A program made the position numbers and the translations under genes. From contig CDROCS010004085.1 of NCBI GenBank assembly GCA_977020255.1, positions 434,001 through 498,000 of the forward strand: a stretch of 64,000 nucleotides of DNA, read 5' to 3'. The stretch comes from Obrimoposthia wandeli. Lineage: Eukaryota. The notes beneath the pieces were generated by a model. That model had not been told where the DNA came from and did not search any database. It saw only the letters and a program-made list of their open reading frames with translations. Below, one piece after another: positions 6,040 through 52,842 of this stretch (positions are counted from its first letter, which is position 1; every line of letters begins with the position of its first letter).

Positions 6040-6899
6040 TATGATACTACCGCTGTAGAAGTTATATTTTTTGAGTTGTTTTGATCTGTTAAATCTGAGC
6101 TTATAATTGATTTATTGCGCTGTTTTTTAGGGCGATTTAACCACTGCGCCATGATTAACAATGGCAAGATTAATACTAAGAATATCAAGGTATAGGCTGA
6201 GCTGATTTCAAGTCGCATAGACGCATAGGAATCAGCCAAACCCACGGGTAGTGTCTTGGTTAGTGGTGTATGCAGCATCCATGTAAGGTTGAATTCACCA
6301 ATAGATAGGGTAAGCGTCATTAGCATGCCGCTGATTATTCCTGACTTACAGTTTGGAACGATCACAGTGAAGAAACGATGCCAGAACCCTGCGCCTAAAC
6401 TTGCACTTGCTTCTTCTAATACCTTGATATTCATACTATGTAAGACTGCTATCACTGACTTCACCATAAACGGTAAAGTAAAAATGACGTGTCCGACTAG
6501 GATAAATAACCAACTGGTTCGAAAGTGGCTATATTGGCTATACACCGAGATAAGCCCAAGTGAAATAGCAAGCCCCGGAATCGCGATAGGTAGGGTTAGG
6601 CACTCTTCAAAAATAGCGGCTGCACGGCTGCGACTGGTAGCTAAGAAATAGGCACATGGAACGCCAGCGAATAAATTGATCGCGACAGTTGTTAATGCAA
6701 TTAATAACGAAAGCCAAATGGTATCAGAATATAAGAACCAGACCTCTTCAACCCAACGGAGAGTTAATCCACTCTTTAAACCCACAAAGTAATTGTTAGT
6801 CAGCCCTGCTAGTACCGACATAATGACTGGCGCAATCAAAAAGGTACAAATCAGCAAAGTAAAGCTGAGTTGCAAATAAAACCACATATCTCTTTTCAT
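6039..6899 (-). CDS. ABC transporter permease
   Basis: Multiple TM segments, EEASASLGA EAA loop; start refined to ATG 6899 (MKRDMWF); stop overlaps the next start as TAATG. Confidence 0.9.
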   Translation of the reverse strand: MKRDMWFYLQLSFTLLICTFLIAPVIMSVLAGLTNNYFVGLKSGLTLRWVEEVWFLYSDTIWLSLLIALTTVAINLFAGVPCAYFLATSRSRAAAIFEECLTLPIAIPGLAISLGLISVYSQYSHFRTSWLFILVGHVIFTLPFMVKSVIAVLHSMNIKVLEEASASLGAGFWHRFFTVIVPNCKSGIISGMLMTLTLSIGEFNLTWMLHTPLTKTLPVGLADSYASMRLEISSAYTLIFLVLILPLLIMAQWLNRPKKQRNKSIISSDLTDQNNSKNITSTAVVS

Positions 6900-6901
6900 T
6901 A

Positions 6902-7714
6902 TTATGCTCCCATACCGATTGAACCGGACCCATAACGTCTTGCAAATGCAAGGCATCCCCATGTCACAGCACCCAAGATAAGGCTCAAGGCCGCGGCCAT
7001 GGCAAAGTTGGCACTCAGGGTAAATTCGGTGTAAATGGTCATTGGTAAAACGTTGATGTTAGTTGCAAGAGTGAAGGCTGTGCCAAAAGCGCCCATTGAT
7101 GTTGCAAAGCAAATTGAACCTGATGAGATTAGGCCGGGCTTCAACGCGGGGATGGTGACATCGCGAATGATTTGCCAGCGATTGGCACCGAGTGAACGCG
7201 CAGCTTCTACTAAGCTGTGATCCAATTTTTCAGCGGCGGCCATAACAGTTAGAACAACTCGAGGTATTGAGAAATATAGATAGCCTAAAAATAGTCCAGC
7301 AATGGAGTAGGCGAACATCCAGCGCTCACCAGTTAGCGCTAGACTAATTTGTGCAAATAGCCCTTGACGACCTGCCAACATAATGACGAAAAACCCGATA
7401 ACAACGCCGGGGAATGCAAGGGGAAAACTTAACATAGCGATAAGTGTTCGTTTCCCTGAAAATTCATAGCGAGTCAGGAATAAACCGCAAATTGTGGCTA
7501 TTACTAAGCTGGCAGCTGTAACAAAAAAGGAAAGTACTATTGTTGATACTAAGCTTTGTAGGTAAATAGGTTTAGTCAGAATGTACCAGTAGCTTATACC
7601 GCCACCATCAGCGACTGACAGCTTGAACAGTTGTAATACTGGGAGCAGAAAAAAGGCTAACGTGATCACCAGTGCTGGGGTGATGAGTAAAAGATGAGTT
7701 TGATTTATTTTCAT
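6902..7714 (-). CDS. ABC transporter permease
   Basis: TM segments, EAARSLGA EAA loop. Confidence 0.9.
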   Translation of the reverse strand: MKINQTHLLLITPALVITLAFFLLPVLQLFKLSVADGGGISYWYILTKPIYLQSLVSTIVLSFFVTAASLVIATICGLFLTRYEFSGKRTLIAMLSFPLAFPGVVIGFFVIMLAGRQGLFAQISLALTGERWMFAYSIAGLFLGYLYFSIPRVVLTVMAAAEKLDHSLVEAARSLGANRWQIIRDVTIPALKPGLISSGSICFATSMGAFGTAFTLATNINVLPMTIYTEFTLSANFAMAAALSLILGAVTWGCLAFARRYGSGSIGMGA

Positions 7715-9973: not shown

Positions 9974-10166
9974 TTCATCTGAATTTTTATGTTTGTGAAT
10001 ATATTGTGACAAATCCATTCATTCTAATTTTTTATCGTTTTATAAATCAGCACGTTGCTTTAACCCTAACAAGTCCTCGCTGAAATGATCATCTTAAGGT
10101 AACGTGTTATGTACAATTTACTATGCCAGTAAGCCGTTTAAACATATTCGCATTAAGGATAGCCTC

Positions 10167-12002
10167 GTGAGTAAGCCAACATTGTTAACGTCTCCAACCC
10201 TTTCGCAAATTAATGTCTTTCCTGTTAAATCTATTGCGGGTCTTAGCCAGTCGCAAGTATGGGTTGAGAAACAAGGGATCAGTTTTGATCGTCGCTTCAT
10301 GGTGGCGAAAAAAGACGGCAGTATGATCACGGCCAGAAAACACCCTGACATGGTAAAAGTGACGGCGACAATACAATCTCACGGTATAACACTGAGCTAT
10401 CCGGGTCGTACGCCGTTGGTATTGAAATATGCTGATTTCTTAATGGAAGACACCAATGCTGAAGTGTGGGGCGACGAATTTAGTGCGTATACCACCACAC
10501 TTAAAGCCGATACTTGGTTTTCTTTACTGTTAGGTCAAGAAGTGCAGTTATTGTATACGGGCGAGCAATCAAATCGTCTTCGCCCGAAGATTAATCAGAA
10601 TGTTAGCTTTGCCGATGGTTTCCCTTTACTGGTAATTAGTGAAGCGTCATTGGAGGCGTTGAATGCTCGCAGTAGTCAGCGAAGCACAATGGATCAGTTC
10701 CGAACCAATCTTGTTGTTTCAGGCACAGAAGCATTTGCAGAAGATAGCTGGAAACGCATTCGTATTGGCGAGGTTGAGTTCTTATCCGTTAAGCCATGTT
10801 CACGTTGTATTTTAACCACAGTGAACCCTAAAACGGCTGAATTTAATGCATTGAAAGAACCGCTAGCCACTATGTCTAAGTTTCGTGCTGATGCATCGGG
10901 TGATGTGTATTTCGGTCAGAATCTGGTTGCATTAAATGAAGGTGAGATTAAAGCGGGTGACATTATTGAAGTGCTAGAAACGAAGCCGAAAGAAGTGTAT
11001 GCCGATAACAGTGAATTGAACTTAACGTTAACCTGCGTTGAACGTGAAGACATTGCACAAGATTTTTGCACATTTTGGTTAGAACCAACAAAAGAACAAA
11101 TATTGCCGACTTATCAACCGGGTCAGCATTTACCGTTGCAACTAGAGATCAATGGTGAGTATATTTCACGCCGCTATACATTGTCATCTAGCCCTTCACG
11201 TCCTGGCCGTTATGCTATTTCAGTGAAACGTGTGAATGATGGACGCGTATCGAACTGGCTGCATGATCATTTAGCCGTGGGCGATACGCTGGTGGCAGAA
11301 AAACCAAATGGCACATTCCATCTCGGTGCGCATACCGACAAATTACTTTTACTTTCAGCGGGCAGCGGCATTACGCCAATGTTATCGATGCTGCGTTATT
11401 TAGCTGATCATAATCAAGTGCATGATGTCGTGTTCTACCATCAGTGCAGTACTCAAAACGATATTCCATGTTTAGATGAGCTTGAATTACTTCAAGAAGC
11501 ACATCCTCATTTAACCGTTCATGTTGTATTAAGTCGTAAAGATAAAGCTTGGAAAGGGTTATCGGGGCGTTTATCTGCTGAGTTATTAAGTCATATTCCT
11601 ACACTCGCTGAACGACAAGTGTTCGTGTGTGGTCCTGATGCGTTTATGAAAGAAGCTAAATCATTACTTCTTGCAAAAGAACTGCCTGAGTCACAGTATC
11701 ACCAAGAAGCATTTGGACCTATTCAGGTAGAAACGGGCGAAGAGAAAAGTGTCACAATCAGTATTGATGGCAATATATTTGAAGGCAACAACCAGCAAAC
11801 AGTACTCGAACAAGCAGAAAATGCAGGCTTGAAGATGGCGAACAGTTGTCGTGCGGGATTATGCGGCGCTTGTAAAGTAACATTAGCAAGCGGTGAGGTT
11901 GAACAACCGGATGTACCTGCATTGTTTTCTGGCGACAAGGTAGAGGGTAAAGTGCTTGCTTGTTGTTGTATTCCCAAAACGGATATTGAACTAATCAGTT
12001 AA
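10167..12002 (+). CDS. ycbX: MOSC-domain molybdoenzyme YcbX fused to a ferredoxin-NADP reductase-like domain and a C-terminal 2Fe-2S ferredoxin (N-hydroxylated base detoxification)
   Basis: FPVKS, DRRFM, FADGFP, FRTNLVV and PCSRC MOSC motifs; RRYTLSS and AGSGITP FNR motifs; CRAGLCGAC...C 2Fe-2S. Start refined to GTG 10167 after AAGGA (ORF track 10104). Confidence 0.88.
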   Translation: MSKPTLLTSPTLSQINVFPVKSIAGLSQSQVWVEKQGISFDRRFMVAKKDGSMITARKHPDMVKVTATIQSHGITLSYPGRTPLVLKYADFLMEDTNAEVWGDEFSAYTTTLKADTWFSLLLGQEVQLLYTGEQSNRLRPKINQNVSFADGFPLLVISEASLEALNARSSQRSTMDQFRTNLVVSGTEAFAEDSWKRIRIGEVEFLSVKPCSRCILTTVNPKTAEFNALKEPLATMSKFRADASGDVYFGQNLVALNEGEIKAGDIIEVLETKPKEVYADNSELNLTLTCVEREDIAQDFCTFWLEPTKEQILPTYQPGQHLPLQLEINGEYISRRYTLSSSPSRPGRYAISVKRVNDGRVSNWLHDHLAVGDTLVAEKPNGTFHLGAHTDKLLLLSAGSGITPMLSMLRYLADHNQVHDVVFYHQCSTQNDIPCLDELELLQEAHPHLTVHVVLSRKDKAWKGLSGRLSAELLSHIPTLAERQVFVCGPDAFMKEAKSLLLAKELPESQYHQEAFGPIQVETGEEKSVTISIDGNIFEGNNQQTVLEQAENAGLKMANSCRAGLCGACKVTLASGEVEQPDVPALFSGDKVEGKVLACCCIPKTDIELIS

Positions 12003-42350: not shown

Positions 42351-44795
42351 TTATGCCTTCTTCACAAGTTGCACGTCGACTAAGTTTGTATGCTGTGGGT
42401 TGCCTTTTGCTAACGGGCTAGGGCGCTGAGTGGTTAGTACGTTAATACAGCCACTGTGATCGATACGTTGTCCATCAGGGGCGTACCAAGCACCTTCACC
42501 TAACGCTACAACACCTGGCATCATTCGAGGTGTGACTTTTGCGTTGATGTGCACTTCACCACGGTCGTTGAAAATACGAATTAGATCGCCATTTTTTATC
42601 CCACGCGTTTGGGCATCTAACGGGTTTAACCACATTTCTTGTTTAGCGGCATCTTTTAAGATATCAACGTTACCGTACGTCGAGTGAGTACGTGCTTTAT
42701 AATGGAAACCCGTTAATTGAAGCGGGTAGTTACCTTGTTTAGAGGCTTCCCATCCTTCGAAATTAGGTGTGTAAACCGGTAATGGATGGATTGTTTCATC
42801 TGCATCCAATTCCCATGTTTGACCTATGCTAGCCAAGCGTTCTGAATAAATTTCAATTTTACCAGAAGGTGTTCTTAGCGGATTTGTTTCAGGGTTTTCA
42901 CGGAAATCTTTATAAGCGACAAAATGCTCTTTCACAAAGCGCTTATAAATACCTTGCTCACGCATGGCTTCGAACGTTGGAAGTAATGGATCTTGTGCGC
43001 GGGTTAGTTGGTATAGGTGACGTAACCAACCTTCTTGATCGCGACCTTCAGTAAAGGCTTCTTCAACCCCTAATTTCTGTGCCAGACCAGTACAAATATC
43101 GTAAATACTCTTTGCTTCAAATTGCGGTTTAATCGCTTGTGATGCAAAGATGAAATACGGCATGTTGCCAGCTGATGCATCCATACAGAAATCGGATTGC
43201 TCAGAGGTGGTTAAATCAGGTAGTACGATATCGGCATATTTAGCAGATGACGTCATGTGGTTATCTATTACCACAATCATTTCACAGGCTTTTTCATCTT
43301 GAAGAATGTCATGGGTACGGTTGATATCAGCATGCTGATTAATCAAACAGTTACCTGCGTAATTCCAGATGAACTTAATAGGCACATCAAGTTTTTCTTT
43401 ACCGCGAATACCATCGGCCGTTGCTGTCATTTCAGGACCGCGGAAAATAGCATCAGTCCACAAGAACATTGGAATAGATGCTTCAATAGGGTTCTTTAAT
43501 GTAGGGAAGCGAACAAAAGGAATGCTAGAGCTGCTTTCGCGTGCCCCTGTACCACCACCGTTAAGGCCAACATTTCCTGTTAATAAAGCTAGCATTGCAA
43601 TCGCACGGGATGCGATTTCGCCATTAGCGGTACGTTGTAGTCCCCAGCCTTGAATAATGGCACAAGGTTTAGTTGAGCCAATTTCGCGCGCTGCTTTGAT
43701 AATTATGTCAGCAGGAATTCCCGTAATTGATGAAGCCCACTCAGGGGTTTTCTCTACTTCATCATTACCTAGCCCTAAAATATAAGACTTATAATCGCTG
43801 TTTGCAGGGGCAGATGCTGGTAATGTTTTTTCATCATAACCGACACAATATTTATCAAGGAAAGCTTGATCAACCAAGTCATCTTTGATCATCACATGTG
43901 CCATTGCCGCAATAAAGGCAGTATCTGTACCTGGGCGAATAGGAATCCACTGATCTTCACGTCCACCTGCTGTATCGGTATAGCGAGGATCGATCACGAT
44001 CATGCGTGCATTAGATTTCGCTTTGCCTTCCATGAAGTGATGAATAACACCACCGCCAGACATACGCGTTTCTGCAGGATTATTACCAAACTGTACAATT
44101 AGCTTGGTATTTTCTAAATCAGAAGGGGAGTTATTTGCCGCAAAGCCCCCGTAAGTGTAGTTCAGACCTACTGCAATTTGTGCCGTTGAGTAATCACCAT
44201 AATGGTTTAAATAGCCACCGTTTAGGTTCATTAAGCGAGCAATCAAACTACCACCCGGAGGCCATGATTTAGTTACTGTACCGCCTAGAGTACCAGTGCC
44301 GTAATTTAAGTAAATTGCTTCATTGCCGTAGTCTTTACGAATAGTGGTAATAGAAGCTGCGATCTCATTGAAAGCTTCATCCCAACTAATGCGTTTGAAT
44401 TTACCTTCACCACGCTTGCCAACGCGTTTCATTGGATATTTTAAGCGATCAGGATTATATACGCGGCGGCGCATTGAACGACCCCGTAAGCAGGCACGTA
44501 CTTGATGATGACCATATTCGTCATTGCCTGTGTTATCGGTTTCAACCCATGTGATTTCGCCATCAGATACATGCATACGTAATGGACAGCGGCTGCCACA
44601 GTTTACGGTACAAGAACTCCATACAACTTTATCTTCAGTTGGCGTTGCAGGCGTAGCGGCAACAGCGGAGGATGATTTAAAAGGTAGCGCCATACTGCTG
44701 GCAACTGCTGCCAAACTGCCTAATATCGAACTCGATTTAACGAAATTTCGGCGAGACAGTTTAGGTGTCGGTAGCTCTTTCAATTTTATTTTCAT
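42351..44795 (-). CDS. dmsA: DMSO/N-oxide reductase molybdopterin catalytic subunit (DmsA/YnfE family)
   Basis: Tat signal SRRNFVK, CTVNCGSRC FS0 motif, RACLRGRS, DYSTAQ Ser ligand. Confidence 0.93.
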   Translation of the reverse strand: MKIKLKELPTPKLSRRNFVKSSSILGSLAAVASSMALPFKSSSAVAATPATPTEDKVVWSSCTVNCGSRCPLRMHVSDGEITWVETDNTGNDEYGHHQVRACLRGRSMRRRVYNPDRLKYPMKRVGKRGEGKFKRISWDEAFNEIAASITTIRKDYGNEAIYLNYGTGTLGGTVTKSWPPGGSLIARLMNLNGGYLNHYGDYSTAQIAVGLNYTYGGFAANNSPSDLENTKLIVQFGNNPAETRMSGGGVIHHFMEGKAKSNARMIVIDPRYTDTAGGREDQWIPIRPGTDTAFIAAMAHVMIKDDLVDQAFLDKYCVGYDEKTLPASAPANSDYKSYILGLGNDEVEKTPEWASSITGIPADIIIKAAREIGSTKPCAIIQGWGLQRTANGEIASRAIAMLALLTGNVGLNGGGTGARESSSSIPFVRFPTLKNPIEASIPMFLWTDAIFRGPEMTATADGIRGKEKLDVPIKFIWNYAGNCLINQHADINRTHDILQDEKACEMIVVIDNHMTSSAKYADIVLPDLTTSEQSDFCMDASAGNMPYFIFASQAIKPQFEAKSIYDICTGLAQKLGVEEAFTEGRDQEGWLRHLYQLTRAQDPLLPTFEAMREQGIYKRFVKEHFVAYKDFRENPETNPLRTPSGKIEIYSERLASIGQTWELDADETIHPLPVYTPNFEGWEASKQGNYPLQLTGFHYKARTHSTYGNVDILKDAAKQEMWLNPLDAQTRGIKNGDLIRIFNDRGEVHINAKVTPRMMPGVVALGEGAWYAPDGQRIDHSGCINVLTTQRPSPLAKGNPQHTNLVDVQLVKKA

Positions 44796-45158: not shown

Positions 45159-45743
45159 ATGGAAAACATCGCGATTGTTGCAAAGCTATTGGGCAGCTTC
45201 TTTTATTTCCCATTAACACATGAGAATAATATTCAATATTTAAACGCTATTAAAAATAGTGATGACGTAAATGATACGGTTTTTTCTGCATTTGTTTCTG
45301 CTATTGAGAATACAAATGAAGAAGCGTTATGTGTTGATTTCCAATTACTATTCGAAGGGTGCGAAATAATGCCAGCGCCACCATGGGGATCGGTTTATTT
45401 AGATCATGAACAAGTGATCTTTGGTGATTCTACGTTACGTTTACGACAGTTTTTAGCTAGTCATAATATGTTGTTAGATACAGGAATGCGTGAGCCGGAA
45501 GATCAATTCGGATTAACCTTGCTAGCCTTAGCAAACATTATTGATCAATGTGACGATGTAACGGTAGTAACAGCCTTGTTAGCCGATCACCTTTTACCAT
45601 GGGCATATCATTACCTCGCATTGGTACAAAAGCATGGTCAGACAGAGGTGTATAAAGTATTGGCTGAACTAGCACAAGAGTGGTTAGCTGCGGTTCAGAA
45701 AGAACTGAGTGTGACACCTCAAACGTATAAATTATATTTCTGA
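45159..45743 (+). CDS. dmsD: Tat proofreading chaperone (TorD/DmsD family)
   Basis: APPWGSVYLD, EPEDQFG, HLLPW. Confidence 0.93.
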   Translation: MENIAIVAKLLGSFFYFPLTHENNIQYLNAIKNSDDVNDTVFSAFVSAIENTNEEALCVDFQLLFEGCEIMPAPPWGSVYLDHEQVIFGDSTLRLRQFLASHNMLLDTGMREPEDQFGLTLLALANIIDQCDDVTVVTALLADHLLPWAYHYLALVQKHGQTEVYKVLAELAQEWLAAVQKELSVTPQTYKLYF

Positions 45744-46300
45744 TGGCCGAGCGTAACGAAAAATATTATCGGGCGTGTCTAGAGCATTACTCCGTAAGCC
45801 GACGAGGCTTATTAAGGGGATTCTTCTCTGGTGCAAATAAAGCTATTCAGCCACCAGATGATATATCGGTAAAACGCTCTGTGCCTCGCCCTCCTGGCGC
45901 TGTAGAAGAAGGTATTTTTTTACAGTTATGCCAATCATGCAATCATTGTGAAACGGCATGTGTGCAGCAAGTGATTGAAATGGTTGAAGGGCGGCCTCAG
46001 CTTAATCTTGATTACAATCACTGCACGCAATGTGGTGAATGCCAAAAAGCCTGTTTATCTGGTGCATTATCATCGACAAACAATGATATTGGTCTGCGTC
46101 CATTATTCTCGAAAGGATGTAATAATCGATTGTCTGGTGAATGCCTAATCTGTACCGATGCTTGCCCGACACAGGCGATCTCTGTTGCCTCTCGTCAGTT
46201 ACCTATTATAGATACAGATTTGTGTTCTGGGTGCGGCCAGTGTCGTTCAGCATGTTTTATTGGTGCTGTTCAACTTGAATGGCCAACAGCTCGCAATTAG
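45743..46300 (+). CDS. napF: NapF-like 4Fe-4S ferredoxin
   Basis: SRRGLLRG, RPPGA, four C-x2-C-x2-C-x3-C groups; start overlaps the dmsD stop. Confidence 0.75.
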   Translation: MAERNEKYYRACLEHYSVSRRGLLRGFFSGANKAIQPPDDISVKRSVPRPPGAVEEGIFLQLCQSCNHCETACVQQVIEMVEGRPQLNLDYNHCTQCGECQKACLSGALSSTNNDIGLRPLFSKGCNNRLSGECLICTDACPTQAISVASRQLPIIDTDLCSGCGQCRSACFIGAVQLEWPTARN

Positions 46301-48941: not shown

Positions 48942-50327
48942 TCAGTGGCTCCTTCGGAAAATAAAGGATTGCTGGAATACATTGTGTTTTGTCTGCGTGA
49001 GCAATTGACTATTGTGTAGCATCAGAATCGATTGAATAATCCTAGTGCCTAAGCCTAATGATCCCGAAGGGGCATTTTGATCGATACGATTACTGATGTT
49101 GATCTCAACCTGATTATGCCGTTTGTTTTTACTCGGCTGAGTAACCGTTAATTCGATGGCTGAGTGACTGGGAGCATGGCGGATCGCATTTTCCAACAAA
49201 TTAGAAAATAGCCGTGATAATAGCTGCCTATCACCTGTTATTGGTGCAATGTCTGCAATATTTAAATTAAGTGAAAGATGTTTTTTTTGAGCATCAATAG
49301 CAATGCTTTCTGTTGTCTCGTAGATAATATCGGCCAGTTTTATCGATTCAAAGTGAGGGGCAGGTTCTGGTTTTTTATCTCTTGCAAGCTGTAGTTGATG
49401 ATGTAACTGAGATGCCAGTTTTTGAGCATTACGATGGGCGGTATCAATCAAAGGGTTTGGCTTTTCAGCTTGAAGTTGCCACGTTTCTAAATAACCTAAT
49501 ACGCTTGATAACGGGGTTTTTAAATCATGGCTAAGTTGCATTAGCATTTCATGGCGAAATGTTTCTTGTTGCTGTAATTGAAGAAATTGCTGCTGAATAT
49601 ATTGCGCCATTTGATAAAACTGTGCCGTAATAGGTTGTAATTCAGGTACTTGTTGTACGAAATCAGGCTGTAAACGGAAGTTATCTTTGGCTTGTAAACG
49701 TAAACGACGGGTGACTGTTTCCATCGGCGTTAGCAGTGAACGTTTCACCATAAAGTAAGTGACCATGCTAAATCCTACGAGTAGAACCAGCGAAGCAATA
49801 AGCACCATTAGTATTGGGCCGTAACTTTCTTGGGCTGTTAGCAAGCTGTGTTTTTCACTGCCGATGACCACATATAAATAACCAATAACTGAACCAAATT
49901 GACTAATCGAGGCAACTGAAAATACCTTTTGTTGTTCGGGTAAGCGAGGGTCGTCGCCTAGAATAGGAAACGGCTTTTCAGCCAGAAATTGTTTGATAGG
50001 AAGAAGGTTTATTTTCCCCATTTGTACTTTGCCTTCTGGGGCGGCATGGCTGCGAATATTACCTTGTTGATCAAGAAAATAAATTTCGAAATCAGGACCT
50101 AATAACATCAGAGTATGAAATATGGATTTTAATGCATCAGGGTTGTAATTCGTGCCTTCCATTAACGGATTATCATCTCGCATGTGGGCAGCTAATTCAT
50201 GATGTAAACCTTGCAGGGTTCGCTGTTCTGTTGTTGCTTGTTGTTGGAAAAACAATGAGCCAATTAATAACGCAGAAAGTGAAAACCATACGCACGTTAG
50301 CAGCAATAAACGTAATTTGAAGTTCAT
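48942..50327 (-). CDS. Sensor histidine kinase with a degenerate ATP-binding domain
   Basis: Two TM segments with a periplasmic domain, SHDLKTPL H-box, NLLENAIRH N-box, SLGLG G2 box; no DxGxG or F box. Confidence 0.88.
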   Translation of the reverse strand: MNFKLRLLLLTCVWFSLSALLIGSLFFQQQATTEQRTLQGLHHELAAHMRDDNPLMEGTNYNPDALKSIFHTLMLLGPDFEIYFLDQQGNIRSHAAPEGKVQMGKINLLPIKQFLAEKPFPILGDDPRLPEQQKVFSVASISQFGSVIGYLYVVIGSEKHSLLTAQESYGPILMVLIASLVLLVGFSMVTYFMVKRSLLTPMETVTRRLRLQAKDNFRLQPDFVQQVPELQPITAQFYQMAQYIQQQFLQLQQQETFRHEMLMQLSHDLKTPLSSVLGYLETWQLQAEKPNPLIDTAHRNAQKLASQLHHQLQLARDKKPEPAPHFESIKLADIIYETTESIAIDAQKKHLSLNLNIADIAPITGDRQLLSRLFSNLLENAIRHAPSHSAIELTVTQPSKNKRHNQVEINISNRIDQNAPSGSLGLGTRIIQSILMLHNSQLLTQTKHNVFQQSFIFRRSH

Positions 50328-50361
50328 GGTGATCCTTCCTTTATTCTGTCATATTGCACAA

Positions 50362-51195
50362 TTAAATCGCCTGAAATTTATAGCCAACCCCCCAAATAGT
50401 GTGGATGTACTTGTGTTCAGAGTGACTGGTTTCCAATTTTGTTCTTAGTCGGTTAATGGTGCTACAAACCGTATGGTGATAGCCCGAAAAGTCGGTATGC
50501 CAAACATGTGTAAGCAGTTCATCTTTGCTATAAACCCGCCCAGGTCTTTTTGCTAAAAAGTGCAGCAAGGTGAATTCTGTGGCTGTTAGATTTACAGGCT
50601 GTTGGTTTACTTCAACTTGGTGAGACTGCGGTTTAATGGCCAGCCCATCAAAACGTAAAATAGGTTCTTGGTTATCGGGTGCGTTATTTAGATCTATGTT
50701 TTGTATACTATCTGAATGATTAGGTTGTGCTTGTTGATCTGAATTCGATGATTTGTTGTGGCTCTCTCTACGTAAAATTGCTCTTATTCTTGCCTGAAAC
50801 TCGAGAACGCTAAAAGGTTTGGTTAAGTAATCATCTGCGCCAGATTCTAAGCCCTCGACTTTATCTTTTTCACTGTCTCTGGCGGTTAGCATCAGTACAG
50901 GTGTCCAATTTTCATGTTGGCGCAGTGTGTGGCAAAGTGTTAAGCCGTCACCATCATCGAGCCCTCTATCTAAGATCATCAGCGAAAATTGATTCTCTTT
51001 AATCAACATATTCGCTTCATTAATGGTGGTTGCACGAACAACTTGATGATTTTGAAGTGTTAAATGCATGCCGATAAGCTCTGCCAGATCGTTATCATCT
51101 TCAACGATTAATATGTTGGAGGGGGCAATTACTTGGTTTGTTTTTGTTATCTCTGCCGCTGTTGTATTTAACATGATCTTTCCCCAGTTATTCAC
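50362..51195 (-). CDS. OmpR/PhoB family response regulator
   Basis: ILIVEDD, ILDRGL, MLTAR, TKPF receiver; winged-helix LTATEF...IHTIWGVGYKF; long polar linker. Confidence 0.93.
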   Translation of the reverse strand: MNNWGKIMLNTTAAEITKTNQVIAPSNILIVEDDNDLAELIGMHLTLQNHQVVRATTINEANMLIKENQFSLMILDRGLDDGDGLTLCHTLRQHENWTPVLMLTARDSEKDKVEGLESGADDYLTKPFSVLEFQARIRAILRRESHNKSSNSDQQAQPNHSDSIQNIDLNNAPDNQEPILRFDGLAIKPQSHQVEVNQQPVNLTATEFTLLHFLAKRPGRVYSKDELLTHVWHTDFSGYHHTVCSTINRLRTKLETSHSEHKYIHTIWGVGYKFQAI

Positions 51196-51228
51196 ACAAC
51201 ATATTGCTCTCGTTGTGCTTTAAGGTGG

Positions 51229-51261
51229 CAGTTACACCATTTTTATCTTCTGGTGTAACTG
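51229..51261. repeat. 11-bp inverted repeat between the spondin genes and the response regulator
   Basis: CAGTTACACCA-N11-TGGTGTAACTG; no U-tract on the minus strand. Confidence 0.75.
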
Positions 51262-51330
51262 ACCGGATAGGAAAAGAATTCTTTCATTGAATAGTAAAAT
51301 TGTCCGATTGGAAAATGCGTTATGCGACAA

Positions 51331-52047
51331 CTATTCTGTACGAGTAATGCTTAACCGTGCGCCAGGATTTAAGAATCGATGGGTTGCGTTTAATACCGAT
51401 GTGGCTAGCCCATCATCAAGGCTAATGATACCTGCATGGAATGAAACCCGGTTAGTATCGTCACGCGCACTATTAAAACCTTCACCACCGGCTGCTGGTC
51501 CGGGTATGCTTGCCGCAGATTCAGTGTTGTTTTCTGTACCTGAATCCCAAACTGCCATGTTCATGTTCAAACTTGTCCCTACAGCTAGCGATGTGAGATC
51601 TAATTGAGTTTTCCCCACAAAACCATCATTGGTATTCACCAACATGCTGGCGACAGATACCAAACTGGCTTGAGTTGAATCTATTGTAAAAGTAATGGTG
51701 TCGCTGTTGCCGGGTAATACAACCCCCGTGCCAGAGAAGCTATAACCGACATTGGTGTTTGTTCCCTTTTCAGCAAGTACCGATGAGTTGTCACCACTTT
51801 CAGCCAATAGTTCTAAACCATCACTTGCTGCTTCACCCACTGAAAATAGGCGATATTGGTCGTTATGTGCTAATACTGCTAGCGGAGAAAGCGGTTGATT
51901 GGGTGTAAGGTTTTTGACGGTAACTGTGTAGCTGCGGGTTGTTTGAGTTGCATCACCATTATCGCCGCCGATGATAATATTATCATCGGCGGGGCAACCT
52001 ACTAACACGCTTACACTGGCTGCAATTGCTATCAGACGGAATTTCAT
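51331..52047 (-). CDS. Spondin_N domain lipoprotein
   Basis: Lipobox VLVG-C; V.NLT..QPLSP...AH, LAESGD, MLVNTNDGFVG, WDSGTENN spondin motifs; GGAGG SD. Confidence 0.85.
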   Translation of the reverse strand: MKFRLIAIAASVSVLVGCPADDNIIIGGDNGDATQTTRSYTVTVKNLTPNQPLSPLAVLAHNDQYRLFSVGEAASDGLELLAESGDNSSVLAEKGTNTNVGYSFSGTGVVLPGNSDTITFTIDSTQASLVSVASMLVNTNDGFVGKTQLDLTSLAVGTSLNMNMAVWDSGTENNTESAASIPGPAAGGEGFNSARDDTNRVSFHAGIISLDDGLATSVLNATHRFLNPGARLSITRTE

Positions 52048-52057
52048 ATCAGCCTCC

Positions 52058-52765
52058 TTATTTAACCGTTACGGTCATTATCGCTACTGGATTTAACCAA
52101 CGGTATGCGCTGCTGTTAATGTCGCTCACACCCCCTGTTGGGTTTGTATCACCAAGATTGCCGGGGTGAATATGTACTTTGTCATTTGTGACTGTGGCTT
52201 CGACACCTGTGCCGCCAGTACCAAACGTAATAAAAGGGGGATTAGGCATACTTGCTGCTAATTCGTCGTTCGCTTCTGTACCAGCATCGTAGCCATTTAA
52301 GTAAACTTTGTAGGTGCCAGGTGTCGATGGAATAACCCAGCTATCAAGCCCGACAAAACCATCGTTAGTGGGTAATAACATGGCTGTCACCGATAGTCGG
52401 TCGAGGTCACCAGTACTTATTGACGTTGTAGCCGCTACACCGGGATTTAGTATGCCACTGGCTGGGTTCTCTATAACGACAGCGCCTGCATTACTGGCTA
52501 AAGAGGATAAACCTGAAATATCACCGCCTTCCGCCATTGCTTCTAGTTCTGCCGATGCGCTAGTACCTGATTCAAATAAATGAACATCAGCACTGTGTGC
52601 AGCAACAAGCAGTGGCGTAAAGTAAATTCCTTTTGTTGCGTTGGTTACTGAAATATCAAGTTCTGCCGCCTGTAAGCCCACAGAACATAAAATAGAGGTA
52701 CTGATTAAAGAGGCTTTTATTATAGAGGGTAAATGCATTGTTGTTTTCATCATCGCGTCCATCAT
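52058..52765 (-). CDS. Secreted Spondin_N domain protein
   Basis: Signal peptide ending LQA; V.NAT..IYFTP...AH, MAEGGD, MLLPTNDGFVG, YDAGTEAND. Confidence 0.85.
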   Translation of the reverse strand: MMDAMMKTTMHLPSIIKASLISTSILCSVGLQAAELDISVTNATKGIYFTPLLVAAHSADVHLFESGTSASAELEAMAEGGDISGLSSLASNAGAVVIENPASGILNPGVAATTSISTGDLDRLSVTAMLLPTNDGFVGLDSWVIPSTPGTYKVYLNGYDAGTEANDELAASMPNPPFITFGTGGTGVEATVTNDKVHIHPGNLGDTNPTGGVSDINSSAYRWLNPVAIMTVTVK

Positions 52766-52777
52766 GTTGTTGGTGAT

Positions 52778-52842
52778 ATTTAAAGCATGACGGATAAATC
52801 TGGCAATCTTCTCGCGAAATTCTCACAAATTCATCACAATTG
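52778..52842 (-). promoter_or_regulatory. Predicted spondin-operon promoter with three 11-bp-period direct repeats upstream of the -35
   Basis: Minus strand: TTGCCA (-35, 52806-52801), 17 bp, TTAAAT (-10, 52783-52778). Plus-strand repeats TCTCGCGAAAT / TCTCACAAATT / CATCACAATTG at 52810-52842. Confidence 0.55.

What the first reader, a model, noticed from the sequence alone, without database searches (positions are those of the whole stretch)
48942..52842. Bacterial spondin cassette: two paralogous Spondin_N proteins plus their own two-component system in one apparent operon
Seen in sequence: four co-oriented minus-strand genes encoding a secreted spondin, a lipoprotein spondin, an OmpR-type regulator and a periplasmic-sensing kinase. 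Both spondins share the N-x-T...P...AH, E-x-GD, NDGFVG and D-x-GTE blocks. Established: Spondin_N is known from animal F-spondin/mindin, an extracellular Ca2+-binding and pattern-recognition domain; I know of no assigned function for bacterial versions. Inference: a soluble and a membrane-tethered spondin act as a periplasmic ligand-sensing or buffering module (Ca2+/metal, glycan or envelope cue) that feeds or is induced by the cognate kinase, like accessory proteins of other TCSs. This is my best candidate for an undescribed system here.
Basis: partly seen in the sequence, partly recalled or inferred. Interest (0 to 1): 0.75.

Follow-up and report, generated by a model that had tools for sequence, protein, structure and literature searches.

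The report
Bacterial spondin pair with dedicated regulator
A four-gene cassette found in many marine bacteria encodes two calcium-site-bearing relatives of the animal spondin domain plus their own two-component regulator; it is real and strongly conserved, but its function has not been studied.

Summary
Window 48942-52839 (minus strand) carries spoA (secreted Spondin_N protein), spoB (lipoprotein paralogue), a PhoB-like response regulator and a membrane histidine kinase.

- **Conservation.** In 80 loci from as many species, the spondin pair is present in 80/80. An orthologous regulator follows in about 67 and a kinase in about 57. No other neighbour is conserved.
- **Fold.** The predicted fold matches mindin and F-spondin, and the three Ca2+-ligand positions are invariant.
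- **Operator (new here).** Phased 11-bp TGTGA repeats, followed by a fixed -10-like hexamer, lie upstream of spoA in most loci. This fits a pho-box-like site, which would make the spondins a direct regulated output.
- **Hairpin (new here).** A stable hairpin usually separates spoB from the regulator gene.
- **Degraded phosphorelay (new here).** All Vibrionaceae kinases, including this one, lack the G1 and F boxes of the ATP-binding domain. Alteromonas relatives have no kinase and a regulator that has lost phospho-acceptor pocket residues, yet keep the spondins and the operator.

The spondins are therefore more likely effectors, perhaps with feedback on the kinase, than pure upstream co-sensors. 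The ligand and the inducing signal are unknown. I found no functional study, only one passing mention from 2018. I class it as a new variant of a known kind, of moderate to high interest.

The parts
52784..52839 (-). Promoter-operator of the cassette. It has four helically phased 11-bp repeats with cores TGTGA 52838-52834, TGTGA 52827-52823, CGCGA 52816-52812 and TGCCA 52805-52801, then a -10-like CATGCT at 52789-52784.
   Evidence: There is an exact TGTGA-N6-TGTGA match at 52823-52838. The same element, with at most 1 mismatch, lies upstream of spoA in 59/81 loci, against 0.5% of control stretches. Of 133 such sites in 931 kb of loci, 86 fall in the 290 nt upstream of spoA on the coding strand. 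The third and fourth repeats and a fixed CATnCT at +49..+54 are seen in the position matrices.
52058..52765 (-). spoA: secreted (signal peptidase I type) stand-alone Spondin_N / FS-domain protein, 235 aa as called. The probable start is at 52753 or 52750.
   Evidence: Pfam PF06468 scores 33.2 bits and NF038123 scores 199.5 bits. None of 80 orthologues has a lipobox, apart from one doubtful case. SpoA forms a clade separate from SpoB with support 1.0.
51331..52047 (-). spoB: lipoprotein paralogue (lipobox LVGC, Cys18, Pro at +2), 238 aa. The Ca2+-ligand positions are D141, D168 and E172.
   Evidence: Pfam scores 51.5 bits and NF038123 scores 182.7 bits. The AF2 model has pLDDT 84, with the core above 90. 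Foldseek finds mindin FS 3d34 at E 2.5e-12 and F-spondin FS 3q13 at E 1.5e-11. A [GA]-C at the end of the signal peptide is present in 80/80 orthologues. The ligand positions were aligned against PMC3117680.
51227..51264 (-). Intercistronic RNA hairpin between spoB and the regulator gene (GGUCAGUUACACC ... GGUGUAACUGCC). No U-tract follows it.
   Evidence: The gap folds with a z-score of -3.31 against dinucleotide shuffles. The equivalent gaps in 67 loci have a median z of -3.4, and 76% are below -2, using mononucleotide shuffles. The simple scan called no intrinsic terminator there.
50362..51174 (-). OmpR/PhoB-family response regulator, 270 aa from the ATG at 51174. The acidic pocket, acceptor Asp, Thr and Lys are intact. 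It has a Q/N-rich extended linker.
   Evidence: Response_reg scores 87.9 bits and Trans_reg_C scores 90.1 bits. The best NCBIfam hit is PhoB TIGR02154 at 209 bits, below its 296 cut-off. Searches give the alignments.
48942..50327 (-). Membrane sensor histidine-kinase homologue. It has two TM helices, a periplasmic alpha/beta (PDC-like) domain at about aa 28-168 (49824-50246), and a HisKA domain with an intact H box (SHDLKTPL). Its ATP-binding domain lacks the G1 and F boxes, with the deletion near 49086-49091.
   Evidence: HisKA scores 37.8 bits. HATPase_c matches only profile positions 1-44 and scores 26.2 bits, below the 26.4 cut-off. One search gives the AF2 secondary structure. One search shows the alignment. 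G1 (D.G.G) is absent in 20/20 Vibrionaceae and present in 37/37 other orthologues. Pfam scores for orthologues are 68-102 bits outside Vibrionaceae and 0-26 bits inside.

Best explanation
This is a self-contained, probably autoregulated envelope-signalling cassette.

**Shown**
- Two anciently duplicated periplasmic FS-domain (spondin) proteins, one soluble and one lipid-anchored, are almost always encoded immediately upstream of a PhoB-like response regulator. Usually a membrane histidine kinase with a periplasmic domain follows.
- An array of 11-bp phased TGTGA repeats, followed at a fixed distance by a -10-like hexamer, precedes spoA.
- A stable hairpin usually separates spoB from the regulator gene.
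- The Ca2+-ligand positions of animal F-spondin are invariant in both paralogues.

**Inferred**
- The cassette's own regulator binds the repeats, which take the place of a -35 element as pho boxes do, and activates spoA-spoB.
- Read-through past the hairpin gives lower expression of the regulator and kinase genes, which would create positive autoregulation.
- The two spondins work as a Ca2+-loaded heteromeric pair. It is probably tethered to the outer membrane, because the +2 residue is Pro, Gly or Ser in most orthologues.
- The pair is the main output of the system. It would bind an envelope ligand such as an anionic lipid, LPS or a glycan head group, as C2-type domains do. It may also feed back on the kinase's periplasmic domain, as CpxP, ZraP or QseG do.
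- In this genome, as in all Vibrionaceae, the kinase has lost the G1 and F boxes but keeps the H box with its H-D-x-x-T phosphatase motif. It therefore more likely sets regulator phosphorylation as a signal-controlled phosphatase or scaffold than as an autokinase.

The inducing signal is unknown. A divalent-cation or envelope cue is only a guess.
For: - **Linkage.** The pair is in 80/80 loci. The regulator cluster is in 72/80 and the kinase cluster in 59/80. The orthologous regulator is directly downstream in about 67 loci, and several absences are contig ends. No other conserved neighbour was found, and the flanks differ between genera.
- **Ancient paralogy.** SpoA and SpoB split with support 1.0 on a branch of 1.65 substitutions per site. 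SpoB always ends its signal peptide in [GA]-C, and SpoA does not.
- **Fold and Ca2+ site.** See, and the invariant D141, D168 and E172.
- **Operator.** It has at most 1 mismatch in 59/81 loci against 0.5% of controls. Sites are roughly 150-fold enriched at the spoA promoter. There are four repeats and a fixed -10-like hexamer.
- **Operator tracks the regulator.** 66/69 loci with an adjacent regulator have the motif at 2 mismatches or fewer, against 5/12 without (tallied by hand).
- **Recognition helix.** GYEHTVNSHINRLR is conserved across cassette regulators. Its Vibrionaceae variant HHTVCST goes with G instead of T at operator position 6.
- **Extra copy.** The third spondin gene in L034 has its own repeat site.
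- **Hairpin.**
- **Spondins as output rather than only input.** Alteromonas and Aestuariibacter keep the pair, the operator and all invariant spondin residues, but have no kinase and a regulator that has lost phospho-acceptor pocket residues.
- **Kinase degeneration.**
Against: - No expression, binding or phenotype data exist for any member. Everything beyond the anatomy is inference.
- The operator is one base away from the ArcA-type TGTTA-N6-TGTTA repeat (recalled from memory), so another OmpR-family regulator could be the binder.
- The helix-operator co-variation is a single clade event.
- The hairpin z-scores across loci used mononucleotide shuffles, and a hairpin could equally be a stabiliser or a protein site.
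- Heterodimer formation, outer-membrane location and the ligand class were not testable here.
- The Vibrionaceae kinase keeps an acidic residue ([IV][DE]) nine residues before G2, so some ATP binding cannot be excluded.
- The only expression datum I found is weak. The V. parahaemolyticus regulator VPA1516 rose 2.8-fold with 55 mM MgCl2, as one of 868 induced genes.
Confidence: 0.55

Rival explanations
1. Co-sensor model. The spondin pair is the ligand-binding front end. Its occupancy by Ca2+, a metal, a glycan or an envelope cue is passed to the kinase's periplasmic domain, as LuxP does for LuxQ, TorT for TorS or QseG for QseE. The true output genes would lie elsewhere.
For: - Co-location with a kinase that has a periplasmic domain of no known family is tight and ancient.
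- One partner is a lipoprotein, as in the QseG, NlpE and RcsF precedents.
- The conserved metal site could confer ligand dependence.
Against: - The spondin genes themselves carry the conserved operator.
- Lineages without a kinase keep the pair and all its invariant residues.
- In the Vibrionaceae, the kinase lacks G1 and F.
- The kinase's own PDC-like domain has conserved polar residues (Y83, D126, R128, K134, S137, Y152), which could bind a ligand without help.
- This model is not exclusive of feedback within the best explanation.
Confidence: 0.25
2. Regulated adhesin or exoprotein model. The spondins are exported beyond the periplasm (surface-exposed lipoprotein plus secreted partner) and bind host, particle or matrix glycans, by analogy with animal spondins as matrix and pattern-recognition proteins. 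The two-component system only times their expression.
For: - The animal FS domains are extracellular binding modules.
- All 80 loci come from marine bacteria, many of them particle- or host-associated.
- The operator evidence fits any regulated output.
Against: - There is no secretion-system gene, sortase, repeat or anchor domain in or near the cassette.
- The proteins are small single domains.
- Free-living sulfur oxidisers and hydrocarbon degraders carry the cassette too.
- Localisation was not testable here.
Confidence: 0.1
3. The repeats are bound by a different global OmpR-family regulator, for example an ArcA-like redox regulator. The adjacent two-component system would then control something else, and the link between the spondins and the system would be positional only.
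For: - The repeat core TGTGA with 11-bp phasing differs by one base from the ArcA direct repeat (from memory).
- Some Shewanella loci have TGTTA in the first repeat.
Against: - G at core position 4 is 91% conserved.
- Motif presence tracks presence of the adjacent regulator.
- Clade-specific changes in the recognition helix and the operator coincide.
- Gene order is conserved across orders with unrelated flanks.
Confidence: 0.07

Closest known systems
FS (F-spondin) domain of animal mindin and F-spondin (Pfam PF06468; PDB 3D34, 3Q13)
   Same: The beta-sandwich (C2-variant) fold is the same by Foldseek (E 2.5e-12 and 1.5e-11) and by profile search. The His of the AH block, the AE-x-G block, and the two signature motifs are shared: PSPDW in animals corresponds to TNDGF in bacteria, and DAGTD corresponds to DxGTE. 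These motifs supply the Ca2+ ligands D325, D354 and D358 in F-spondin.
   Different: Identity is only 15-21%. The bacterial proteins are stand-alone domains of about 200 residues with a signal peptide or lipobox, and have no reeler or thrombospondin repeats. They have extra invariant residues after the Ca2+ motif (N174, E176), a conserved Gly/Pro-rich loop and H204. They always come as a paralogue pair and are tied to a two-component system.
PhoB-PhoR and pho-box promoters
   Same: The regulator's best family hit is PhoB. The operator is built from 11-bp phased direct repeats placed where a -35 element would be, upstream of a -10-like hexamer.
   Different: The scores are far below the PhoB and PhoR equivalog cut-offs (209 against 296, and 80 against 334). 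The repeat core is TGTGA, not TGTCA. No phosphate genes are nearby. The kinase has a large periplasmic domain.
Two-component systems whose main target is a periplasmic accessory protein that feeds back on the kinase (CpxP with CpxAR, ZraP with ZraSR, Spy with BaeSR)
   Same: A small periplasmic non-enzymatic protein is encoded next to the system and, by inference here, is directly activated by it. ZraP is also a metal-binding protein.
   Different: CpxP, ZraP and Spy are alpha-helical, not beta-sandwich. They are single genes, usually divergently transcribed, and are not lipoproteins. Feedback is untested here. This comparison rests on established knowledge, not on a tool result.
QseE-QseG-QseF (also NlpE with CpxA, RcsF with the Rcs system): a lipoprotein as a signalling partner of an inner-membrane kinase
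   Same: A lipoprotein gene lies in the same operon as the kinase and regulator.
   Different: The folds are unrelated. Here there is a soluble paralogue as well. The lipoprotein persists in lineages that lack the kinase.
Histidine-kinase homologues without autokinase activity (RetS, DivL, RcsD)
   Same: The DHp domain is retained while the catalytic domain is degenerate. RetS and DivL were among the Foldseek hits of the model, alongside many ordinary kinases.
   Different: Here the phospho-accepting His and the H-D-x-x-T motif are intact, and only the G1 to F segment is deleted. The loss is confined to one family, the Vibrionaceae, and orthologues elsewhere are canonical.
Gene neighbourhood of the L-amino-acid oxidase of Pseudoalteromonas luteoviolacea (PMC6316408)
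   Same: The same four genes are present: two Spondin_N proteins, an OmpR-family regulator and a histidine kinase.
   Different: That paper only listed them as neighbours of the oxidase and indolepyruvate decarboxylase genes. Those two genes are not part of the conserved core.

Membership tests
Spondin_N / FS domain (Pfam PF06468; NCBIfam NF038123) | Profile HMM score above the curated cut-off | tested here: met
   SpoA scores 33.2 bits and SpoB 51.5 bits against a cut-off of 24. For NF038123 they score 199.5 and 182.7 bits against a cut-off of 40.
Spondin_N / FS domain (Pfam PF06468; NCBIfam NF038123) | FS-type beta-sandwich fold | tested here: met
   The AF2 model of SpoB has pLDDT 84. The only significant PDB matches are mindin and F-spondin FS domains, with probability 1.00 and TM 0.57-0.65.
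Spondin_N / FS domain (Pfam PF06468; NCBIfam NF038123) | Ca2+ site formed by the Asp of PSPDW and the first and last acidic residues of DAGTD | tested here: met
   The residues are present and invariant (D141, D168, E172) in 72 sequences. Actual Ca2+ binding cannot be tested with these tools.
F-spondin / mindin proteins (animal architecture) | FS domain joined to reeler and/or thrombospondin type 1 repeats | tested here: not met
   No other Pfam domain is found in either protein. The whole mature protein is the FS domain.
Bacterial lipoprotein (SpoB) | Lipobox with an invariant Cys at the end of the signal peptide | tested here: met
   The window has LVGC. A [GA]-C is present in 80/80 orthologues. 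The +2 residue is P, G or S in 56/72 and D in 9/72.
OmpR/PhoB-family response regulator | REC domain with acidic pocket, acceptor Asp, Thr and Lys, plus a winged-helix Trans_reg_C domain | tested here: met
   The domains score 87.9 and 90.1 bits. The residues are seen in the alignment.
PhoB (TIGR02154 equivalog) and PhoR (TIGR02966) | Score above the equivalog cut-off | tested here: not met
   The regulator scores 209.4 bits against 296.2. The kinase scores 79.9 bits against 334.2.
Classic HisKA-type sensor histidine kinase | HisKA domain with the phospho-accepting His | tested here: met
   HisKA scores 37.8 bits, and SHDLKTPL is conserved.
Classic HisKA-type sensor histidine kinase | Complete HATPase_c domain with N, G1, F and G2 boxes | tested here: not met
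   The domain scores 26.2 bits, below the 26.4 cut-off, and only profile positions 1-44 are matched. G1 (D.G.G) and F are deleted in 20/20 Vibrionaceae orthologues. Orthologues elsewhere score 68-102 bits.
CpxP/ZraP/Spy-type periplasmic accessory proteins | Alpha-helical CpxP-like fold | tested here: not met
   The model is a beta-sandwich.
CpxP/ZraP/Spy-type periplasmic accessory proteins | Gene directly activated by the cognate regulator, with the protein modulating the kinase | tested here: inconclusive
   A conserved operator upstream of spoA supports direct control. Which regulator binds it, and whether there is feedback on the kinase, cannot be tested with these tools.

The most novel reading that the evidence does not exclude
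The spondin pair is a Ca2+-dependent heterodimer that binds envelope lipid or glycan. It would be both the sole direct output and the feedback sensor of its own signalling system. That would define a new envelope-surveillance response that is widespread in marine bacteria and is built on the same domain that animals use in extracellular matrix and innate recognition. In Vibrionaceae it would run on a kinase-dead, phosphatase-only sensor.
Probability: 0.2. Interest if true: 0.78.

Novelty: new variant of a known kind. Interest (0 to 1): 0.6.

Why it matters
- **Scale.** At least 592 stretches in species-representative genomes encode relatives, and every one of the 80 loci examined carries the paralogue pair. 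V. parahaemolyticus, V. harveyi, the V. splendidus group, Shewanella, Colwellia, Alteromonas and sulfur-oxidising symbionts are among them. This is therefore a large piece of unexplored marine envelope biology.
- **A testable entry point.** The work gives a defined operator, a predicted regulon core and named genes in a tractable model (VPA1515-1518).
- **Domain evolution.** The Ca2+ site is conserved from bacteria to animals, which bears on where the FS domain of spondins came from.
- **Natural experiment.** The same cassette exists with a canonical kinase, with a kinase lacking its ATP lid, and with no kinase and a regulator that has lost acceptor-pocket residues. This series shows how a two-component system can lose its phosphorelay while keeping its output.

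Tried and rejected
- **Literature.** I searched for 'spondin' with bacterial, two-component, Vibrio and periplasmic, and for 'Spondin_N', 'spondin domain-containing protein' and locus tags VPA1508-1518. There is no functional study. The hits were animal spondins, R-spondin reagents, or a reeler-domain modelling template in archaeal cytochromes. My first guess at the V. parahaemolyticus tags (VPA1508-1511) was wrong: those are fimbrial genes and scrC. I corrected it to VPA1515-1518 from scrABC and sodC.
- **Kinase sensor domain.** It has no Pfam family (best is dCache_1, E 0.13) and no PDB sequence relative. Foldseek on the full-length kinase model was dominated by catalytic cores and said nothing about the sensor.
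- **Terminator scan.** It found nothing between spoB and the regulator gene. The hairpin there has no U-tract.
- **Second exact repeat site.** It lies at 9994-10009, upstream of a MOSC-flavodoxin-reductase-ferredoxin fusion gene. One extra site is within reach of chance, so I did not count it as regulon evidence.
- **Neighbours.** sodC in V. parahaemolyticus, PhoX in the V. splendidus group, EamA here, MgtE in Alteromonas, and L-amino-acid oxidase in P. luteoviolacea are lineage-specific and not core.
- **Tree.** I used FastTree instead.
- **Not run.**
  - The large representative protein search.
  - Mapping invariant residues on the model, because coordinates are not exposed.

Full report
**1. 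What is in the window**

The region 48942-52839 holds four minus-strand ORFs.

- **SpoA**, 52058-52765, 235 aa. It has a cleavable signal peptide ending LQA|AE. Orthologues begin at the position of the fifth or sixth residue, so the real start is probably the ATG at 52753 or 52750.
- **SpoB**, 51331-52047, 238 aa. It starts 10 nt after the spoA stop, behind an AGGAGG Shine-Dalgarno. Its signal peptide ends in the lipobox LVGC.
- **Response regulator.** After a 156-nt gap comes an OmpR/PhoB-type regulator. The ORF runs 50362-51195, and the likely start is the ATG at 51174.
- **Histidine-kinase homologue**, 48942-50327, 461 aa. It follows the regulator after 34 nt.

Both small proteins pass Pfam Spond_N (33.2 and 51.5 bits against a cut-off of 24). 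They match NCBIfam NF038123, 'spondin domain-containing protein', over its whole length (199.5 and 182.7 bits against a cut-off of 40). The neighbouring genes have no evident connection. They encode an EamA transporter, a DsbA-like protein, an HxlR regulator, a DcuC carrier, a PTPS-like protein and an outer-membrane beta-barrel.

**2. The organism and the spread of the cassette**

The closest SpoB relatives are from Photobacterium indicum (92%) and P. profundum (90%).

A scan of one genome per species found at least 592 stretches encoding a relative. The best 80 loci were fetched. They cover:
- Vibrionaceae: Photobacterium, Vibrio, Enterovibrio, Thaumasiovibrio and Veronia;
- Shewanella, Colwellia, Thalassotalea, Alteromonas, Pseudoalteromonas, Microbulbifer and Kangiella;
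- Oleispira, Bermanella, Oleiphilus and a Hahellaceae genome;
- Chromatiales, Thiotrichaceae, Thiodiazotropha and Woeseia;
- one alphaproteobacterium (Parvularculaceae) and one Sulfurimonadaceae genome.

All 80 have a SpoA-type gene immediately followed by a SpoB-type gene. A regulator cluster is present in 72 loci and a kinase cluster in 59. The orthologous regulator lies directly downstream in about 67. Several loci without a kinase simply end at a contig edge.

Clustering all other ORFs found no further conserved neighbour. The only recurrent clusters inside the cassette are antisense shadow ORFs. An EamA gene recurs in 14 loci, mostly Vibrionaceae. Flanks differ between V. parahaemolyticus and a V. 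splendidus-group genome, which share only the four genes.

**3. The two spondins**

SpoA and SpoB share about 30% identity. They separate into two clean clades (FastTree support 1.0, branch 1.65 substitutions per site). The duplication is therefore older than the spread across these orders, and both copies have been kept everywhere.

The division of labour is constant.
- Every SpoB ends its signal peptide in [GA]-C.
- SpoA does not.
- The residue after the SpoB Cys is Pro, Gly or Ser in 56 of 72 cases and Asp in 9. By the E. coli sorting rule (established knowledge, not tested in these organisms) this predicts an outer-membrane anchor for most.

An AlphaFold2 model of SpoB built on 72 sequences is confident in the core (mean pLDDT 84, most blocks above 90). 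One floppy, Gly/Pro-rich but conserved loop spans residues 177-200.

Foldseek against the PDB gives only three significant hits, all FS domains. They are the two chains of mindin 3D34 (E 2.5e-12 and 7.4e-12) and F-spondin 3Q13 (E 1.5e-11). A profile search of PDB sequences agrees.

In F-spondin the bound Ca2+ is held by D325 of the PSPDW motif and by D354 and D358 of DAGTD (PMC3117680). These positions align with D141 (TNDGF), D168 and E172 (DSGTE) of SpoB, which are invariant in all 72 bacterial sequences.

The bacterial family has further invariant or near-invariant residues of its own: N46, P55, N140, N174, E176, P182, G190, H204, H223, R224, N227 and P228. H61 and E83 are shared with the animal proteins. 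I could not place these on the model because coordinates are not exposed.

**4. A conserved operator upstream of spoA (new)**

The window has TTGTGATGAAT-TTGTGAGAATT 58 nt upstream of the called start. This is two TGTGA cores 11 bp apart.

- *Frequency.* The same arrangement occurs on the coding strand upstream of spoA with no mismatch in 29 loci and at most one mismatch in 59 of 81. The same is true of only 0.5% of random 280-nt stretches from the same loci, 0.6% of shuffles, and 1 of 81 on the opposite strand.
- *Enrichment.* Across 931 kb of fetched loci, 86 of 133 sites lie in the 290 nt before spoA, which is about 1.2% of the searched sequence.
- *Architecture.* Position matrices show a third and a fourth repeat in phase. 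A CATnCT hexamer sits at a fixed +49 to +54 from the first core. In the window the repeats span 52839-52796 and the hexamer is CATGCT at 52789-52784.
- *Interpretation.* Phased direct repeats abutting a -10 and occupying the place of a -35 element is the layout of pho-box promoters activated by PhoB (established knowledge). PhoB is also the regulator's nearest named family.

Three observations tie the element to the cassette's own regulator.
- It is present, with at most 2 mismatches, in 66 of 69 loci with an adjacent orthologous regulator, and in 5 of 12 without one (tallied by hand).
- The recognition-helix region GYEHTVNSHINRLR is conserved in all cassette regulators.
- In Vibrionaceae that region reads HHTVCST, and operator position 6 is G in 19/23 and 22/23 repeats. 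Elsewhere it is T in 30/48 and 35/48.

The last point is one evolutionary event, so it is suggestive only. One caveat comes from memory: the ArcA direct repeat TGTTA-N6-TGTTA differs by a single base. A few Shewanella loci have TGTTA in the first repeat.

**5. The gap between spoB and the regulator gene**

The window gap folds into a strong hairpin at 51227-51264. The whole gap has a z-score of -3.31 against dinucleotide shuffles. Equivalent gaps in 67 loci have a median z of -3.4, and 76% fall below -2, using cruder mononucleotide shuffles. No U-tract follows, and the terminator scan found nothing.

I read this as an attenuating or stabilising element. It would let the spondins be made in excess over the regulator and kinase. 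That is inference.

**6. The kinase is not a standard kinase in this family (new)**

The AF2 model (pLDDT 79) shows two membrane helices flanking a periplasmic alpha/beta domain at about residues 42-155. A long signalling helix, DHp and a catalytic domain follow. The strand and helix order of the periplasmic domain resembles PDC sensors. That domain matches no Pfam family and no PDB sequence. It has conserved motifs, including LGDDPR and K-x-FS.

- The H box SHDLKTPL and the N box are intact.
- Between the N box and G2, all 20 Vibrionaceae orthologues, including the window's, lack about 25 residues. The missing segment carries the G1 box (DxGxG) and the F box in all 37 orthologues from other families.
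- Pfam scores reflect this. HATPase_c scores 68-102 bits outside Vibrionaceae. Inside it scores 0-26.2 bits, below the 26.4 cut-off.
- The remnant is well conserved within Vibrionaceae, so it is under selection.
- G1 supplies the adenine-binding Asp in this fold (established knowledge). I therefore infer poor or no autophosphorylation, with phosphatase or scaffold function retained. A conserved [IV][DE] nine residues before G2 leaves room for doubt.
- The regulator keeps its acidic pocket, acceptor Asp, Thr and Lys.

**7. Natural variants that bear on the mechanism**

- *Alteromonas and Aestuariibacter* (L053, L058, L060, L062). The pair and an exact operator are followed by a regulator whose receiver domain has lost the acidic pocket, Thr and Lys, and in two cases the acceptor Asp. 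No kinase follows. The next genes encode a prolyl oligopeptidase and MgtE.
- *Enterovibrio norvegicus.* The pair follows an ECF sigma factor gene and an unknown 231-aa gene.
- *Enterovibrio qingdaonensis.* The pair follows a PAS kinase and an Hpt-REC-GGDEF protein. Both Enterovibrio loci have GCGAGA-type direct repeats instead.
- *L052.* The orthologous two-component genes lie upstream of the pair.
- *L034.* A third spondin gene is present with its own repeat site.

The spondins and their invariant residues therefore persist without the kinase. This argues that they do something in their own right and are not only a ligand-binding front end for the kinase.

**8. What is known**

NCBI has a family model but no function. 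[quoted passage not shown]

In V. parahaemolyticus the cassette lies beside sodC and scrABC. scrA, scrB and scrC are VPA1513, VPA1512 and VPA1511 (PMC10269520), and the Cu,Zn superoxide dismutase is VPA1514 (PMC12352638). The cassette is therefore VPA1515 (kinase) to VPA1518 (SpoA). This assignment is my deduction from gene order.
- VPA1515 appears in a census of two-component systems with no assigned role (PMC10469919).
- VPA1516 rose 2.84-fold in broth with 55 mM MgCl2, as one of 868 induced genes (PMC10990858).
- No searchable paper mentions VPA1517 or VPA1518.

**9. Verdict**

The linkage is among the tightest one can show by comparative genomics. The best-supported reading is an autoregulated cassette whose direct output is the Ca2+-site-bearing spondin pair. 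Feedback on the sensor is possible but untested. In the window's own family the 'kinase' has very probably ceased to be one. The ligand of the spondins and the inducing signal remain unknown, and my suggestion of an anionic envelope ligand and a divalent-cation or envelope cue is a low-confidence inference from the C2-like fold and the metal site.

I rate it a new variant of a known kind: a two-component system with co-encoded periplasmic partner proteins, here of the spondin fold. Interest is 0.6.

Noticed in passing
window 9994-10009 (+): This is the only other exact TGTGA-N6-TGTGA site in the 64-kb window. It is intergenic, about 100 nt upstream of a gene (10104-12002) for a MOSC_N-MOSC-FAD-NAD-2Fe2S fusion protein, and downstream of a divergent LacI-type regulator gene. 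It could be a second target of the cassette regulator or a chance match.
   Followed up: partly
window 50362-51174 (-), regulator residues about 138-180: The regulator has a Q/N/S-rich insertion in the linker between the receiver and DNA-binding domains. It is 270 aa, against 243-252 aa in Vibrio orthologues. Other Photobacterium copies are also long, at 256-263 aa.
   Followed up: no
L053, L058, L060, L062 (Alteromonas, Aestuariibacter), about 6700-7500: The spondin pair is followed by an orphan OmpR-type regulator. It has lost the acidic pocket, Thr and Lys, and in L053 and L062 also the acceptor Asp. No kinase is present. An MgtE gene lies close by and cytochrome bc1-sspAB genes lie upstream.
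   Followed up: partly
L027 3865-5105 (Enterovibrio norvegicus); L031 720-5212 (E. qingdaonensis): The two-component genes are replaced next to the spondin pair by other signalling genes. In L027 these are an ECF sigma factor plus an unknown 231-aa protein. In L031 they are a PAS histidine kinase plus an Hpt-REC-GGDEF protein. The upstream repeats read GCGAGA instead of TGTGA.
   Followed up: partly
L040, L046, L051 (Shewanella), kinase C-termini: The Shewanella kinases keep G1 (DTGxGM) but have replaced the F-box segment. This is a second, independent alteration of the ATP lid in this kinase family.
   Followed up: no
L001 9042-12696 (V. parahaemolyticus): The cassette sits next to the Cu,Zn superoxide dismutase gene (VPA1514) and the scrABC swarming and c-di-GMP operon. 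This allowed the cassette to be assigned to VPA1515-1518. In a V. splendidus-group genome (L003) the neighbour is instead a PhoX phosphatase.
   Followed up: yes
L034 4301-5032: A third spondin gene of SpoA type lies upstream of the usual pair in a gammaproteobacterial MAG. It has its own TGTGA repeat site about 100 nt upstream.
   Followed up: no
window 45159-46300 (+) and 42351-44795 (-): A TorD/NarJ-type chaperone gene and a multi-4Fe-4S ferredoxin gene lie beside a large 814-aa ORF on the other strand. This is probably an anaerobic oxidoreductase cluster. It is unrelated to the finding and I did not examine it further.
   Followed up: no
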